The notes below the pieces were generated by a model. That model worked only from the letters and a program-made list of their open reading frames with translations, searched no databases and was not told where the DNA came from. Shown one piece after another: positions 13,691 to 22,879 of a DNA stretch of 46,212 nucleotides. The translations under genes were made by a program, and so were the position numbers. Origin of the DNA: Macrostomum lignano (lineage: Eukaryota); NCBI GenBank assembly GCA_002269645.1, contig NIVC01002945.1, positions 1 to 46,212 on the forward strand. Direction: 5' to 3'. Each line of letters opens with the position of its first letter. The first letter of the stretch is position 1.

Positions 13691-15574
13691 CGGTCTTGGC
13701 CACCAACCAGTCCCTGTTCCAGAGTGCAGCCTGTACTTTGGGCCGCTCAAGTCGTCTGAGAATACATCTGGACACAGCTGGACTCCGGCTGCTGCTTTAT
13801 GAACACCTGCGCTCTGCGAGTGCGGCTGCAGTCTCTCATCTACTTGCTGCACCCATTGAACCCAAGCAGCTGGCACGCTGAAAGCTGACTTCCTCACACA
13901 GGTGTGCTCATCGGTGTTTTTAAGAACTCATGCAGCCCCTCACGCATTTCAGGCCGTCAGTTGCGTGAAACGCGGAGCACGAAAGCGGCAGAAACGGCGG
14001 CGGACTCATAGTTTTATTAAGTTTTATTACCTTTTAACATTTGATCTTGTTGGCTTGCTTTGTTGCTTTGATGAACCTCTTGGTGGAGGCTGGTAAAAGT
14101 CATGATCCTGAGAAACTTCCACGACCAAAAACCACAGACCATATGCCTCCTGCTCGAAGTTCCCGAATACTGCCGGGTTAGCTGTTGATATAGTTAATTG
14201 ATAGTTACGCTGTTGATGCTTATCAACCACAAACCCCCGCGCACCAATATATCCCACCTCCTTTCTACTGTTCGAAATCATACATGCATGTGACAGTTTA
14301 TAACCTCTTACATGTATCTCGCCAAGCCTTTTCCCTCGTGTTGTGTAATCCCCCAATCATAAATCATTTTCTTCGCTGCGCCCTACTCCAATTTCTCGTC
14401 CAATCACAGCGCGGCTGGCGGGTGACGTCATCGAGGACACAGAGCGCGCCGCATGTCTCAGACACTTTGTACGCTATACAGGAACGCAGTCACAACAAAT
14501 CCCACACAATATGCAAAATTTACATTGAAATAGTCGTCAACGAAAAGTACAGGGTTTTCTGAAATCGATCGCATACCCACCCACAAGCAAGCATACAAAC
14601 CTTAGAGATTTAGTATATTTAGAAGTTCAATGCTTTTTTCTTCCAGAGAAAGTAGTAAAGTAAGCCTGATGTATAGTGTACATGTATACTGTAATGTCCA
14701 AATCGTGGGAGGAATCATTAAAATGATCGCTTCATAACTTGTCAAATCTTTTTCGTCGATCTTGTCTAGTCTGATCTCACGCACACAAAGAAAACTTAGT
14801 TATGAATTATTTGGAAAGCTATGTTTAAATAAATATTACGATTATTTGTTGGGATTCATCCTTGTTGTGTTAAAATATGTGTAAAACTTTTACAGCGTAC
14901 ATTCAAAAAGTAAACAAAAGTTATAGTGACCACTTGACAGATCATTGTTAAAATTTGAATGGAAATGATATTATTGACTTATAAAATTAAGAAAAAACCA
15001 GTAAAAAAACACGTGCGATCAAAGAAAATTTTAAATTACGTTTTGCTTAATATGTTTGCATTTGTGAACATTATTAAACTCTACTGTAACGTAAGGTTTA
15101 AATATAGTACTACACTGGAACTCAACTGGAAGTGTAATATCAATAATAATCTTTGCAATGTATGTAGACAGTAGACCTACATTGATTTGATGGCGCATGA
15201 CCAAGATGGCCACACACCAAGATGGCCACAGCTCTGAATGGCTGCTTGGATAGGAATAGGTCTATATATTTCCTCATTTCCTATTGGCTGTGATTGGGGT
15301 GGGGTATGACGTAGCTTCAAGTCTCGGAGAAGACAGATTTCATTAGTGAAATTAGACTAAGTAAAACAAAAAACACTTCCCTTTACAGCAGGTATTACTA
15401 CCTACTAAAGCTAGTAACACTACTAGCACAAGACATTTAATTTTTGTATCATGGATAATAGTTTCAAACCTATCTCAATATACTAAAACTGACGTGTTTT
15501 TTGTATATGTTAAAAGTTAAAGGTAAAGGGTAAAGGTATTAGTTATGATAGAAGTAAGCAAAAATTGGAGTGCC

Positions 15575-16130
15575 CTCTTGTCTCTCATCTTTTCTCTCAT
15601 CTCTGCACTCTCGTCTCTTATCTTTTCTCTCTCTCTCTCATCTCTGCCCTCTCCTCTCTCATCTCTTGCCCTCTCCTCTCTTATCTATTCTCTCTCATGT
15701 CTGCCCTCTTCTCTCTTTTCTCTCTCATCTCTGCCCTCTCCTGTATCATCTTTCTCTCTCTCATCTCTGCCCTCTCCTCTCATCTCTTGCCCTCTCTCTC
15801 ATCTATTCTCTCTCTCATGTCTGCCCTCTTCTCTTATCTTTTCTCTCTCATGTCTGCCCTCTCCTCTCATCTTTTCTCTCTCTCATCTCTGCCCTCTCCT
15901 CTCTCATCTCTGCCCTCACCTCTCTCCTCTCCTTTCTCCTCATGTCTATCCTCTCCTCTCTTCTCACCTCTTTGCTATCATCTCCCTTTTCCTCTTCATT
16001 CTCTTCTCCCTTCCCTCCTTTCTCCTCTCCATTAATCTCCCTTCCCTCCTTTCTCCTCTCCATTAATCTCCCTTCTCCTCTCTCTCCGCTCGTATATAAT
16101 CTCTCCTCTCATCAACTCTCTTCTCCTTTA
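15575..16130. repeat. CT-rich degenerate repeat (ctctctcatctctgccctctc-like)
   Basis: Pyrimidine-rich low-complexity tract inside the element. Confidence 0.85.
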
Positions 16131-16260
16131 ATCCATTTCTGGCAACAGCGCTCTTACATCAGCTCAGATATCCATCCTTGACAGGCGATATATCAACAGC
16201 GACGAAAAGATCCCAGAGATCAAACTGAATAAAAACAGACTGAAAGCCCTAGAGCGCTCC

Positions 16261-19442: not shown

Positions 19443-19891
19443 TTTTAGAGAAAAATTAGATTTTTTTCAATGGGTAAGGACCCTGCGCTGATGATTTAAA
19501 GTCTTAGGGATGTGGTAGCACGTTGCGGATTGAATGTGGGGAGAAGAATGCAGATTATTTTCTGATTGTTTCGAAGATGCTATGGGTGGATGTCGGTGTC
19601 AATGAGCATAACAGGTGTTAGTGGACATCTGTTATGCTCTGATTCTGTCAGGGATAGTAATGGATGGATTTAATAGGATTATGTTCGAAGTTTTCGGAGC
19701 AAGTGCGGCCCCTCCCCTTTTTCATGATTCTGTCAGGGATAATATGGATGGATTTAATGGGATTATGGAGGACGTTTTGTGAGCGAGTGCGACCCCCCTT
19801 TTTTTCTGATTCTGTCAGGGATAATATGAATGGATTTAGGTGGATTATGGAGGAAGTGAAAAATTTTGTCCCAGAAGCCCCCTCATGCCTT

Positions 19892-21026
19892 CTACTCCTG
19901 AAGGCCAAGATTTTGGACACGCCTGAAGACAGCTTGACAATAATGGAAGAAGCAGCCGCGAACTTGCGCACCTGGATATACCAGCCGAATTGCTTGCCAA
20001 GCAGCAGCTTCAAAGTCACAGGTGAACTTGATTGGCGCATTACCTGTTGACTCCCAAAGGCAACGAAAGCAGGCTTGATAATCAGCTTGAGCCTTACCGG
20101 ACATCAAAAAGAAGGCAAGTGGTACCAGCCTTTCCTGCCCATCAAAGCGGATCAACTTGGAAATGTACGTCAACAGGTTCCATAGGGCGATCTTTTTTGC
20201 GACTGTAATTAGCATTGCGACTCAATGACTCAATACTAAGCACCTCCTGCACTTCAGGTGAAAATTCTCTTACCTTCTCCTCTGCGATAATTCTAGCAGA
20301 GGTAAACAACATGCGCTTTGCTCCCTCCTTTACCTCCTTTGCTGCCTTTCTCTTCTGAGCTGGCCGATCAACTGGATCGCACGTGTGCGGAGCAAGGGCT
20401 TCTATGGTTCCATCAGCACGGCGGACTGCGGAGCCATGACAGTGCAGTGATAAACGCTTAGTGCAGCGATAGTACGTGTTGCCATTTCGCCGCGTTTTTT
20501 CATCCATCAGATGGCCAAGGTCTCGTTGGGCATACTGCACTAGAAGATCTTTTCCGTGACTGCATCCTGCACCTGTAAGAATCTCAAAGGGCTGGGGAGG
20601 TGGGCTGCGGGGCGGTGCAAGCTCTGCTGGAGGAATTTGAATGGATTCTTCCAGAGCTGGATCAGGGTCATTGAAATCTGGATACTGGTAAAGAAAATTT
20701 TCTGTTTGTGCCGGAATCAAATGCACTGGTTCTGGATTTTCAGCAGGCAGAGGAACAGCCGCTGGTCCAGAATTCGGGGCTTGTACATGTACCACTACAG
20801 CATCTGCAGCTTGAGACACTGCTAAGTTACCTGCAGGAGCCCGTCTATTGCATTGATTGCAAAGCCAGAAAAACTCACCGACATTTCTCATTGCAGAATA
20901 CTGATCGATTGTGACGCGACTATCACATGCACGGTGCTCCCAATTCAAGCATTGAGAACACTCGATTGCTTCTTGTCCATCGCAAACTGGCTGCAGACAG
21001 ACCACACATGGATATGCGCCTGCCAT
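19892..21026 (-). pseudogene. PHD finger-FLYWCH-MULE transposase, internally deleted and 3'-truncated
   Basis: PHD: CVVC..V...QEAIECSQCLNWEHRAC...FWLCNQC. FLYWCH-like: YYRCTKRLSLHCHG...HTC. MULE core in a shifted frame: VPLAFFLMSGK..DY...CDFEAAAWQAIRLVYP....GCFFHYCQAVFRRVQNLGLQ. The DGTF-containing segment is missing. Confidence 0.85.
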
Positions 21027-22879
21027 TTTGTATCTAAGTGCTTAGACTGCTTCAGTGAATGAGACAGATGAATTTTGAACAGGGCATGAAATTTACCCAG
21101 TTTTTATCCCTTTAAACAAGTAAATTAGTCTCGACCAATAAGAGAAACTGGAAAAAGCTACACCAGATTTTATATGAAGAAGAGCTTTGTTTAATACGAA
21201 ATATGTTTACACCTCTTAGGGGCCTACTATAAGTAGGAAATTAAGACTCGTAACCATTTTTGTCTTTAGCCCTGCAATAAACTAATAAAATTTTGACTGC
21301 CTGTCTAAACCCCCCCCCCATTGCAACCCCACATCTCCCCACCCGAAGCTATCCAATAGTAAACCAGTTGTCATTTTCCGTGACCCCCACCTCAGCTGTG
21401 GCCATCTTGGTGTGTGGCCATCTTGGTCTTACACCGATTTGATAGGGACTCCAGTGAGATTTAAAAAGTTATTTTTGTATCTTTTATTCCATCCATTTGA
21501 TAAATCTCATTCTCCTGGACCTGAGTAACAAGACACCATACTTTTGAAAATTGGTCAGTCAAGTAATAAAAAAAATTACAAAACTTCTTGTATCTTAAAT
21601 TTTCAACATTTTGACTAAAATGTATTAGACACTGATTCACTTTTAGTTTTGGCTAGGCCTAAAAACTTAGTTTTTACTTTTTACTTAGGCCCTATATTTT
21701 TTAATCTTTCCAATAACTTTTTTTATTTTACTAACTTTTCTTAACCAATTTCTATGCCCAATACTCAATAGGCCTATGTCATTGTTTAGCTTTTGCCTTT
21801 TTATCCTTGGCCTTATCTATCAAATTAATAAAAATAAATCTAATGTAGCATTATAGCCACAACTTTGGCCTAGCCAAACTCTGCAACAATGCCTAAAAGT
21901 CAATCTTAGAGTTCAACCTAAAATGCATAAGAAGACTAGGCCTGGGCATAGGCATACAAAAAACTTTTTTACCATTTTTGCTTTTACTAGACCTAGGCCT
22001 AGCATATTTAATTCCTTTCTCCTTTTGTAATAAACATAATTTAGCATTTTTAAGAGCCTAAAAGTTGTTTTCTAAGCCTAACTAAAGGCAACAAAGCTAA
22101 CTTTCTAAAAAAGTAAAAACAAAGAAAAAATTGTCAAAAATTGGCTATCAAATTCTAAAACAGAAGATTAGGGGGCCTAGCTAAAAATAAAAAAATATAT
22201 TTTATTATATTATATTATTGGCTCTGTATTTTTTGCCTTTTTTGTAAGTGTGATACATATTTATTAATAAGTTAGTTTATTAAGTTAGTATAGACATATA
22301 ATAAATAGATATTATATTCAATCTAGTTAAACCATTTCTATATATATATATTGTGTTTTTAAGATTAGGAAAGAAAGTTATCAAGACCCTAGACTCCATT
22401 TAACTCCCATGATCTCATTGCAATTTGTACTTTAATATACCTTATATTATCAATTGATTATCACTATCAATAGTGAAATTATGTTTAAGTTATAAGTATA
22501 ACATTATAGCCCATTCAAAATTCAAATACTTTCAGTTTTCTAACTTCTATAAAAGTTTCAATAAAAATTCTAATTAGTGCTAGTATTTTAGTATGAGATA
22601 CAATTTTTTACTAAGGTTATAGCAGTGAAGTGTAAGCATACAGCTGTTTAGGCACTCTAGCACCCACCTGCTCATCATGCTGCATCTGTGCATCACCAAC
22701 TTTGGAGATTAGGGGTGGGGGTTGCCCACCTAGCCTAAGCTTTATGGGGGTTGGGGTTGATTAACTAACTAATGCATTGGCCTATTTAACCTGATTGTGT
22801 GCATACAATTGTGCACAATTTTCTGCCAAGGCACTGGCAGGCAGGTAATGGAGCTTCTACACTGTCAGCAGTTTGTCTT

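What the first reader, a model, noticed from the sequence alone, without database searches (positions are those of the whole stretch)
15192..21435. Pack-MULE-like transposon carrying Polinton/adintovirus gene pieces
Seen: one 6.24-kb unit is bounded by 42-bp TIRs and an exact 8-bp TSD (gatttgat). It holds a MULE transposase remnant next to the right TIR and, internally, a vPLA2 ORF, an integrase N-terminus, a penton C-terminus and orphan ORFs. Established: MULEs capture gene fragments (Pack-MULEs in plants), and vPLA2, integrase and penton are Polinton/adintovirus genes. Inference: a MULE has taken up and could mobilise several non-adjacent parts of an endogenous virus. I know of no described case in an animal, though I could not check the literature.
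Basis: partly seen in the sequence, partly recalled or inferred. Interest (0 to 1): 0.88.

Follow-up and report, generated by a model that had tools for sequence, protein, structure and literature searches.

The report
Dead flatworm MULE holding virus genes
A defective cut-and-paste transposon in the flatworm Macrostomum lignano has had the rear third of its own gene replaced by a scrambled block from an adenovirus-like integrating virus; this is real and unusual, but nothing yet shows the transposon has ever carried the virus genes anywhere.

Summary
42-nt inverted ends (39/42, inner 35 identical) at 15192-15233 and 21394-21435 are flanked by the same 8 bases, GATTTGAT. A MULE transposase remnant lies beside the right end. 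Between the ends lie an intact PLA2-like gene, the start of an rve integrase and the end of a penton gene.

- The virus pieces are not scattered samples. In related metagenome contigs, integrase, PLA2 and penton are neighbours in the same order and orientation.
- One "orphan" ORF (16132-16725) is a fourth virus gene, a coiled-coil protein that follows penton in another contig. It is the only piece out of order.
- The element keeps about 70% of a broken transposase. Its cargo is viral, not host, and I could find no second copy.

So three of the five Pack-MULE features are not met or only partly met, and two (a parent copy elsewhere, further copies) could not be tested.

My preferred reading (0.45): an internally deleted MULE that took up virus DNA as filler during break repair. 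About 477 retained virus codons carry no stop or frameshift despite heavy rearrangement. Nested virus integration followed by deletions is the main rival (0.3).

The window is one whole contig of assembly Mlig_3_7. The rest of the genome was out of reach, so copy number is untested.

The parts
15184..15191 (.). Left target-site duplication, GATTTGAT
   Evidence: Identical 8-mer directly outside both arms.
15192..15233 (+). Left terminal inverted repeat (42 nt; two copies of a 16-nt unit)
   Evidence: Pairs with 21394-21435 at 39/42, inner 35 nt identical. The core motif is found nowhere else in the window.
15581..16091 (.). CT-rich simple and minisatellite array
   Evidence: Tandem Repeats Finder, periods 2 to 87. 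Similar arrays are common elsewhere in the window. Origin unknown: native to the MULE or grown in place.
16132..16725 (+).
   Evidence: tblastn E 7e-12, 45% identity to residues 8-73 of the 218-aa gene that follows penton in L006. Open for 197 codons. Contains an in-frame 84-bp tandem duplication.
16727..16894 (-). Remnant of the virus rve integrase gene (N-terminal part only)
   Evidence: tblastn E 1e-18 to 7e-16, 54-58% identity to the N-termini of the integrases of L002 to L005. The L003 integrase is 333 aa with Pfam rve, E 1.7e-8.
16895..16920 (.). 26-bp divergent spacer between integrase and PLA2
   Evidence: The same head-to-head layout has 22-23 bp spacers in L002 and L003.
16921..17421 (+). 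Intact PLA2-like (PLA2X-type) virus gene, 166 codons plus stop
   Evidence: Pfam PF08398, E 2.9e-13. Nine relatives at 55-62% identity, E to 1e-56. Start, stop and almost every residue that the eight relatives share are kept; a histidine all eight share near the C-terminus is cysteine here.
17422..19020 (.). Scrambled filler with no recognisable gene
   Evidence: Two out-of-order scraps copied from the PLA2 gene (17717-17749 at 97%; 17903-17968). A 155-bp tandem pair at 18408-18695. A 102-codon ORF at 18127-18432 with no Pfam match. No capsid-gene remnant.
19021..19197 (+). Remnant of the virus penton gene (C-terminal part with its native stop)
   Evidence: tblastn E 5e-23 and 4e-19, 62-64% identity to the last 58-67 residues of the 280-aa family. 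The family's predicted structure matches mavirus penton (E 4e-8), adenovirus penton base, and adomavirus and MELD-virus pentons.
19209..19466 (-). Unassigned 86-codon ORF converging on the penton remnant
   Evidence: No Pfam match. No similarity to the convergent reading frames after penton in L002 or L010.
19638..19857 (.). 82-bp minisatellite (2.6 copies) just downstream of the transposase remnant
   Evidence: Tandem Repeats Finder. Minisatellites after the transposase ORF are recorded for some animal MULE groups (PMC6446971, Table 1), so it may be native to the MULE.
19895..21026 (-). Broken MULE transposase gene (PHD-type finger, FLYWCH-like finger, most of the MULE domain)
   Evidence: Pfam MULE, E 3.3e-12. 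Aligns to residues 1-449 of the 633-aa relative P0022 at 48% identity, E 5e-63, in two reading frames. The stretch with the first catalytic aspartate has no counterpart. The last ~184 residues are absent from the whole window.
21027..21393 (-). Leader between the transposase start and the right TIR
   Evidence: By position. No ORF of note.
21394..21435 (-). Right terminal inverted repeat
21436..21443 (.). Right target-site duplication, GATTTGAT

Best explanation
This is a dead, internally deleted MULE. A MULE of a PHD/FLYWCH-finger family inserted here and made the 8-bp duplication. The last ~30% of its transposase gene was later lost. In its place sit ~4.3 kb of foreign DNA (about 15550-19890). 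Roughly 3 kb of that derive from one integrase-plus-virion-gene block of an adintovirus/Polinton-like virus: a coiled-coil gene, the integrase start, a whole PLA2X-type gene and the penton end.

The most likely route (inferred, not shown) is faulty double-strand-break repair. This would be interrupted gap repair after a transposase cut, or end-joining, with the repair machinery copying or ligating virus DNA and short scraps as filler. That is the process thought to produce internal-deletion derivatives and Pack-type transposons.

The product is non-autonomous and, as far as the data go, a one-off. Nothing shows that the composite has moved since it formed.
For: Shown:
- TIRs and TSD enclose everything.
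- The transposase remnant matches residues 1-449 of a 633-aa relative. Its C-terminal ~184 residues are nowhere in the window, so foreign DNA replaces MULE sequence rather than merely interrupting it.
- Four virus genes are identified by homology to metagenome contigs, and their native adjacency is seen there.
- The penton fold is confirmed.
- Relatives carry a double-jelly-roll capsid gene and an rve integrase.
- PLA2X is a hallmark of Alpha-adintovirus virion modules (PMC8502044).

Pointing to repair-coupled acquisition:
- The retained virus coding pieces total ~477 codons with no stop or frameshift, and the PLA2 gene is complete. Yet at least four gene truncations, one out-of-order gene and two out-of-order 33-66-nt PLA2 scraps are present.
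- My rough estimate is that the chance of ~1.4 kb of unselected coding DNA staying open falls below about 5% once divergence exceeds ~1-2%. That fits abrupt rearrangement of fresh DNA better than slow decay.
- Short scrambled patches copied from nearby sequence are typical of filler DNA (my own knowledge of Mu, Ac/Ds and P-element deletion derivatives).
Against: - Only one copy could be examined. No donor locus, no junction microhomology and no second copy are available.
- The virus encodes its own integrase, and nesting is the commonest way one mobile element ends up inside another.
- Some internal tandem repeats differ by 10-15%. That could mean a long residence, although they may have arrived already diverged.
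- The age argument rests on rough assumed rates for stop-creating substitutions and indels.
- The CT-rich array and the 82-bp minisatellite may be native MULE parts, which would shrink the 'foreign' share.
Confidence: 0.45

Rival explanations
1. Nested insertion followed by deletions. An adintovirus/Polinton-like virus integrated, using its own integrase, into the 3' part of the transposase gene of a MULE already sitting here (or in the parent copy). Several large deletions and a rearrangement then removed both virus ends, most virus genes and the transposase C-terminus.
For: - TE-in-TE nesting is common in repeat-rich genomes, and more than half of this genome is repetitive (PMC5730564).
- The block includes the integrase start, and integrase|PLA2|penton keep their native order and orientation.
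- Degraded endogenous adintoviruses are widespread in animals (PMC8502044).
Against: - No virus terminal repeat or virus-type target duplication was found. The inverted-repeat scan found nothing of the kind inside the element.
- At least four separate truncations plus relocation of the coiled-coil gene are needed, while ~477 retained codons show no stop or frameshift.
- The deletion must also have run past the insertion site into the transposase.
Confidence: 0.3
2. A true Pack-MULE-like family. The composite formed once, was then moved in trans by an autonomous relative, and exists as several copies with the same cargo.
For: - Both TIRs and the TSD are well preserved, and the transposase is defective, as expected of a non-autonomous element.
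- MULEs are the DNA-transposon superfamily best known for picking up foreign DNA (PMC6446971; PMC6431247).
Against: - There is no evidence of any second copy. The TIR motif is absent from the rest of the contig and from the JGI metagenomes.
- No autonomous partner with these TIRs was found. The closest full-length transposase, on L009, shares no TIR and only 48% protein identity.
- At 6.2 kb it is at the top of the Pack-MULE size range, and most are 1-2 kb (PMC6431247).
- Part of the transposase is retained, and the cargo is viral rather than host.
Confidence: 0.15
3. Assembly artefact. The contig wrongly joins a MULE copy and a virus-derived locus.
For: The assembly is repeat-rich and redundant (PMC5730564). 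The window is a short stand-alone contig of 46 kb.
Against: A chimera would not be expected to leave matched TIRs with an identical 8-bp duplication on both sides of the joined material. The contig comes from the Mlig_3_7 assembly, which to my recollection was built from long reads; I did not check this, nor read lengths or read support for this contig.
Confidence: 0.03

Closest known systems
Pack-MULEs of plants (Jiang et al. 2004, as summarised in PMC6446971 and PMC6431247)
   Same: Mutator-type TIRs and a TSD in the 8-11 bp range enclose gene fragments foreign to the transposon. The element cannot move itself. The likely origin is faulty repair or copying.
   Different: The host is an animal. 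The cargo is virus genes, one of them complete, not host gene fragments. About 70% of a broken transposase gene is still present. The size is 6.2 kb against a typical 1-2 kb. No parent copy and no further copies are known.
Internal-deletion derivatives of cut-and-paste transposons with filler DNA from interrupted gap repair (MuDR, Ac/Ds and P-element derivatives; from my own knowledge)
   Same: Both ends are intact and the transposase is partly deleted. Unrelated DNA and short, scrambled, locally copied patches sit at the deletion site. The composite can form at the element's own site, keeping the original TSD.
   Different: Filler is usually tens to hundreds of bases. Here it is ~4.3 kb and includes a whole virus gene.
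Animal MULE groups with zinc fingers: Phantom, the Schistosoma sub-group of MULE-Phytophthora_1, Rehavkus, Spectre (PMC6446971, Table 1 and text)
   Same: These groups have 42-46 bp TIRs and a FLYWCH finger in a flatworm group, a PHD finger and minisatellites in Rehavkus, minisatellites after the transposase ORF in Phantom, and an 8-bp TSD in Spectre. All of these are comparable with what is seen here.
   Different: No sequence comparison with those named families was possible. The nearest protein found (P0022, 633 aa, unnamed, from an SRA run) is only 48% identical, and its contig shows no matching TIR.
Alpha-adintovirus / Polinton (Maverick) virion module with PLA2X (PMC8502044; PMC4028283)
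   Same: A small PLA2-like gene of the parvovirus VP1 type, a single-jelly-roll penton, a double-jelly-roll capsid gene beside penton in relatives, and an rve integrase.
   Different: No PolB, Adenain protease or FtsK ATPase was seen on any related contig (all are 3.7 kb or shorter). No terminal repeats were seen. Two different gene orders occur among relatives. The nearest relatives are 55-64% identical and come from unnamed metagenome organisms.
Teratorn of medaka, a piggyBac transposon fused with a herpesvirus (named in PMC6431247; details from my own knowledge)
   Same: This is a precedent in an animal for cut-and-paste transposon ends enclosing virus genes.
   Different: Teratorn holds a near-complete virus genome and a working transposase, and it is multi-copy. 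Here there are four gene pieces and a dead transposase in one known copy.

Membership tests
Mutator superfamily (MULE) | Transposase with the MULE (DDE) domain | tested here: met
   Pfam PF10551, E 3.3e-12. 4135 library relatives at E<=1e-3, the best being a 633-aa PHD+MULE protein. The copy is defective.
Mutator superfamily (MULE) | Terminal inverted repeats | tested here: met
   42 nt, 39/42 matching. This is within the 18-613 bp range listed for animal groups (PMC6446971).
Mutator superfamily (MULE) | Target-site duplication of 8-11 bp | tested here: met
   Exact 8-bp GATTTGAT on both sides. The range comes from PMC6446971.
Pack-MULE | Non-autonomous, with the transposase gene lost | tested here: inconclusive
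   Non-autonomous, yes. But a remnant covering residues 1-449 of 633 is still present. Classical Pack-MULEs have lost the gene (PMC6446971).
Pack-MULE | Cargo consists of fragments of host (cellular) genes | tested here: not met
   All identified cargo genes are viral: PLA2X-type, integrase, penton and coiled-coil. The rest has no match.
Pack-MULE | A parent copy of the cargo exists elsewhere in the same genome | not testable with these tools
   Only this contig of assembly GCA_002269645.1 is readable. The nearest relatives found are 55-64% identical and come from metagenomes.
Pack-MULE | Further copies with the same cargo and different TSDs (moved after acquisition) | not testable with these tools
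   No DNA search of the M. lignano genome is available. The TIR is absent from the rest of the window and from JGI metagenomes.
Pack-MULE | Cargo assembled from several unlinked loci | tested here: not met
   Integrase|PLA2|penton are adjacent in L002, L003 and L010, and penton|coiled-coil are adjacent in L006.
Polinton / adintovirus (as donor of the cargo) | rve-type integrase | tested here: met
   The window keeps the N-terminal ~55 codons. They are homologous to a 333-aa protein with Pfam rve, E 1.7e-8.
Polinton / adintovirus (as donor of the cargo) | Single-jelly-roll penton | tested here: met
   Predicted structure of the 280-aa family: pLDDT 69. Foldseek gives E 4e-8 to mavirus penton 6g41 and matches to adenovirus penton base, a MELD-virus penton and adomavirus LO5. 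TM-scores are only 0.27-0.5. The window holds only the last ~58 codons.
Polinton / adintovirus (as donor of the cargo) | Double-jelly-roll major capsid protein | tested here: inconclusive
   Present next to penton in relatives L006 to L008 (Pfam DJR-like_dom, E 6.5e-7, above the cut-off). Absent from the window.
Polinton / adintovirus (as donor of the cargo) | Protein-primed PolB, Adenain-type protease, FtsK-type packaging ATPase | not testable with these tools
   None are in the window. All related contigs are 3.7 kb or shorter and stop before such genes could appear. IMG/VR and JGI scans found no longer relatives.
Polinton / adintovirus (as donor of the cargo) | PLA2X accessory gene (Alpha-adintovirus virion module) | tested here: met
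   Intact 166-codon PLA2-like gene, Pfam E 2.9e-13. The feature is described in PMC8502044.
Polinton / adintovirus (as donor of the cargo) | Own terminal inverted repeats with a short target duplication | tested here: not met
   No inverted repeat brackets the virus block inside the MULE.

The most novel reading that the evidence does not exclude
The composite is a genuine animal Pack-MULE-type family. In this reading a cut-and-paste transposon picked up a block of adintovirus virion genes, including a complete PLA2X gene with its native upstream spacer, and has spread it to several sites in the Macrostomum genome. A DNA transposon would then be a second vehicle for virus genes and a possible route to their domestication.
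Probability: 0.12. Interest if true: 0.75.

Novelty: new member of a known kind. Interest (0 to 1): 0.38.

Why it matters
If the composite is a one-off, it is a tidy example of a transposon break being patched with virus DNA in an animal germ line. It also gives a first glimpse of adintovirus/Polinton-like sequences in a free-living flatworm model. The adintovirus survey I read (PMC8502044) does not mention flatworms.

If further copies exist, it would extend Pack-type gene capture from plants to animals and from host genes to virus genes. It would also offer a route by which a complete membrane-active virus gene (PLA2X) could be spread and possibly co-opted.

The related metagenome contigs also outline an undescribed lineage with small PLA2, penton and capsid genes and at least two gene orders.

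Tried and rejected
- Word-indexed protein search with the 294-aa transposase N-terminus found nothing. The exhaustive search with the MULE-domain ORF later found P0022, which does match that N-terminus.
- Exact-protein look-ups of the window's transposase, PLA2 and retrotransposon ORFs: none is on record. So other genomic copies could not be reached by that route.
- IMG/VR scans with penton, the PLA2 alignment and the capsid protein gave no relatives. One call failed because the alignment had no conserved stretch.
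- JGI metagenome scans with the penton alignment and with a 29-nt TIR core gave nothing.
- A weak tblastn match (E 0.13) between the C-terminus of P0022 and the translated left TIR suggested that the relative's ORF runs into a similar TIR. I rejected this: L009 contains no such repeat, and its DNA resembles the window only in the MULE domain.
- The ORF at 19209-19466(-) was tested as the convergent gene seen after penton in L002 and L010. There is no similarity.
- No capsid-gene remnant lies between PLA2 and penton.
- Pfam scans of ten further internal ORFs gave nothing credible.
- The idea that the MULE inserted into a virus was rejected, because the virus pieces lie inside the TIRs.
- hAT, P and Zisupton, which also make 8-bp TSDs (my own knowledge), were set aside because the enclosed transposase is of MULE type.

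Full report
**Source and setting**

An exact-protein look-up of a neighbouring 396-aa ORF shows that the window is the entire 46,212-bp contig NIVC01002945.1 of assembly GCA_002269645.1. NIVC01 is the Mlig_3_7 assembly of the free-living flatworm Macrostomum lignano (PMC5730564). More than half of that genome is repetitive, with abundant simple repeats and much duplicated sequence.

The finding sits in an AT-richer stretch (35-40% GC) between host genes. A CAP59-like gene lies at 5115-6305(-). An Nsp1/Nup62-like gene lies from 24001 onward. A GPR180/TMEM145-like exon lies at 30168-31343(-). An intact-looking non-LTR retrotransposon ORF lies at 42082-45006.

**Checking the observation**

- The two arms, 15192-15233 and 21394-21435, are 42 nt long and match at 39 of 42 positions. 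All three mismatches are in the outermost eight bases, and the inner 35 nt are identical.
- Each arm contains two copies of a 16-nt unit.
- The 13-nt core of that unit occurs exactly four times in the window, all within the arms.
- The same eight bases, GATTTGAT, lie directly outside both arms.
- Beyond 42 nt the two ends share only scattered short motifs.

The boundaries and the target duplication are therefore real and far beyond chance.

**The transposon part**

On the minus strand next to the right arm are two overlapping open frames. The first (20142-21026) gives weak PHD and FLYWCH finger matches. The second (19892-20215) gives a clear MULE-domain match, E 3.3e-12.

An exhaustive search with the second frame found 4135 relatives. 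The best is a 633-aa protein, P0022, at 61% identity over the domain. P0022 comes from a 2.8-kb contig of an SRA run (L009) and carries PHD and MULE domains.

Against P0022, the window's remnant (19895-21026) covers residues 1-449 at 48% identity, E 5e-63. The state of this gene, by count:
- one change of reading frame;
- no in-frame stop inside the aligned parts;
- about 60 residues of the relative with no aligned counterpart, including the stretch that carries the first catalytic aspartate;
- the second acidic residue and the C..H motif kept;
- the last ~184 residues absent from the whole window.

It cannot encode an active enzyme. The 8-bp duplication and 42-nt arms fit the Mutator superfamily: TSDs of 8-11 bp, flatworm groups with 42-46-bp TIRs and FLYWCH fingers, and an 8-bp TSD in Spectre (PMC6446971).

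**The virus part**

*PLA2.* The ORF 16921-17421 matches the parvovirus-VP1-type PLA2 family, E 2.9e-13. It has nine relatives of 145-180 aa at 55-62% identity, all on short metagenome or SRA contigs. It is complete: start, stop and almost every residue that the eight relatives share are kept. Differences are a histidine shared by all eight relatives near the C-terminus that is cysteine here, a short N-terminal in-frame insertion, and an in-frame 21-bp tandem expansion in the variable acidic linker.

*Integrase.* On those contigs the PLA2 gene stands head-to-head with an rve integrase, 22-23 bp away (L002 to L005). The window has the same layout, with a 26-bp spacer. Only the first ~55 of ~333 integrase codons remain (16727-16894; tblastn E ~1e-18).

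*Penton.* In L002, and independently in L010, the gene directly after PLA2 is a 270-280-aa protein. Its last 58-67 residues match window 19021-19197 at 62-64% identity.
- A structure predicted from twelve family members and the window fragment has mean pLDDT 69.
- In the PDB its best matches are the mavirus penton (E 4e-8) and adenovirus penton bases.
- Among predicted viral structures it matches giant-virus minor capsid proteins, a MELD-virus penton, adomavirus LO5 and adintovirus proteins, with E down to 4e-11.
- TM-scores are modest (0.27-0.5), but the hits are unanimous in kind.

*Capsid gene in relatives.* In L006 to L008 the gene before penton is a 422-aa protein. It matches Pfam's double-jelly-roll-like domain above the curated cut-off.

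*Coiled-coil gene.* In L006 the gene after penton is a 218-aa coiled-coil protein. Its N-terminus matches window 16132-16335 (E 7e-12).

PLA2-like 'PLA2X' genes are described as typical of Alpha-adintovirus virion modules (PMC8502044). The donor is therefore adintovirus/Polinton-like in its virion genes and integrase. PolB, protease and ATPase genes could not be checked, because no related contig exceeds 3.7 kb.

**Order of the pieces**

Left to right the window reads:

coiled-coil(+) | integrase start(-) | PLA2(+) | 1.6 kb without genes | penton end(+)

Integrase|PLA2|penton is the native order and orientation of L002, L003 and L010. Coiled-coil natively follows penton in L006. So the cargo is not a sample of distant virus regions. 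It comes from one block of a few kb, with one gene out of place.

The state of each virus gene, by count:

| Gene | State |
|---|---|
| Integrase | one truncation |
| Penton | one truncation |
| Coiled-coil | truncated at its start and probably at its end; one in-frame duplication |
| PLA2 | unbroken |
| Capsid gene | absent |

None of the retained pieces has a stop or a frameshift.

The 1.6 kb between PLA2 and penton holds two short PLA2-derived scraps in the wrong order, a 155-bp tandem pair and an unassigned 102-codon ORF.

Three more items complete the interior:
- a CT-rich array at 15581-16091;
- an unassigned ORF at 19209-19466(-);
- an 82-bp minisatellite at 19638-19857.

Minisatellites after the transposase ORF are known in some animal MULE groups (PMC6446971), so that one may be native.

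**How it most likely arose**

Two facts constrain the history.
1. The foreign DNA replaces the transposase C-terminus rather than merely splitting the gene.
2. About 477 virus codons and ~390 transposase codons carry between them a single frame change and no stops. Yet the block shows at least four truncations, a relocation and scrambled scraps.

On rough assumptions, about one substitution in twenty creates a stop, and indels run at about a tenth of substitutions. Then 1.4 kb of unselected coding DNA would seldom stay open beyond ~1-2% divergence. This is an inference, not a measurement.

That pattern fits abrupt rearrangement of fresh DNA. I therefore favour acquisition during faulty break repair: interrupted gap repair after a transposase cut, or end-joining, with virus DNA and local scraps used as filler. 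This is the process thought to yield internal-deletion derivatives and Pack-type elements. It would create the composite at its own site with the original duplication, so no later jump is implied.

The main rival is ordinary nested integration by the virus's own integrase, followed by large deletions. It has the higher prior. But it needs many independent deletions without point decay, and it has left no virus ends.

I could not look for them.

**Comparison with known systems**

- It works like a Pack-MULE or a filler-bearing deletion derivative. As a Pack-MULE member it meets the MULE-end criteria. It fails 'host-gene cargo' and 'several unlinked sources', and it is borderline on 'transposase lost'. 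The two criteria that matter most, a parent copy and transposed copies, could not be tested.
- Pack-MULEs are described from plants and are mostly 1-2 kb (PMC6431247).
- A search for papers mentioning both Pack-MULE and Polinton returned 11 papers. None of the listed titles or abstract openings describes a virus-carrying MULE, but I did not read them.
- Teratorn (piggyBac plus herpesvirus, in a fish) is a precedent for transposon ends around virus genes.

**Limits**

- No tool gave DNA access to the rest of the M. lignano genome.
- The transposon-derived ORFs of the window that I looked up are not on record in the protein collection. The deposited annotation excluded transcripts overlapping repeats (PMC5730564).
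- Copy number, empty sites, the donor locus and read support therefore remain open.

Noticed in passing
L002, L010 versus L006, L007, L008: The related virus contigs show two gene orders. In L002 and L010, PLA2 is directly followed by penton, and in L002 an integrase stands head-to-head with PLA2. L006 to L008 have the double-jelly-roll capsid gene followed by penton, and L006 alone also shows the coiled-coil gene after penton. So either there are two lineages, or some of these contigs are themselves rearranged endogenous copies. In L004 and L005 only non-coding DNA follows PLA2.
   Followed up: partly
proteins P0007 (PLA2) and P0019/P0020 (penton), and alignment A1: A nearly identical short peptide insertion (containing GRSLATDVSRA) interrupts both a PLA2 relative and two penton relatives at non-homologous places. 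This suggests a small mobile or repeated insert that is read through in frame in different genes of these viruses.
   Followed up: no
L010:949-1554 (-): A 201-aa cysteine-rich ORF converges on penton in this relative. It has no Pfam match and no counterpart in the window.
   Followed up: partly
window 42082-45006 (+), 44967-45467 (+) and 3122-4040 (+): There is a non-LTR retrotransposon with an open 974-codon endonuclease, reverse-transcriptase and RNase H ORF. A trailing ORF follows it, and its sequence visibly recurs in a second, partial copy near 3381-4040.
   Followed up: partly
window 24001-26099 (+): A host nucleoporin Nsp1/Nup62-like gene: a long FG-type repeat region followed by the Nsp1_C domain, which is split over two ORFs and so probably has an intron.
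   Followed up: partly
window 30168-31343 (-): An exon with a GPR180/TMEM145 transmembrane domain (E 1e-28) runs into a proline/serine/leucine-rich low-complexity tract.
   Followed up: no
window 10592-11956 and 32787-34129: Two tetranucleotide-type (CTGT-like) arrays of roughly 1.3-1.4 kb create long spurious ORFs in several frames. Together with other arrays they give the contig its very uneven GC content and skew.
   Followed up: no
window 17284-17333: A 21-bp tandem expansion inside the PLA2 gene replaces the acidic linker seen in all relatives with a glycine/arginine-rich one, and it does so in frame.
   Followed up: partly
L009 (SRA run SRR8670881): The closest full-length transposase relative lies on a 2.8-kb contig. 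The ORF is uninterrupted at 633 codons, with no TIRs inside the contig and simple repeats at both ends. It could be a transcript or a domesticated copy. The source organism is unknown.
   Followed up: partly
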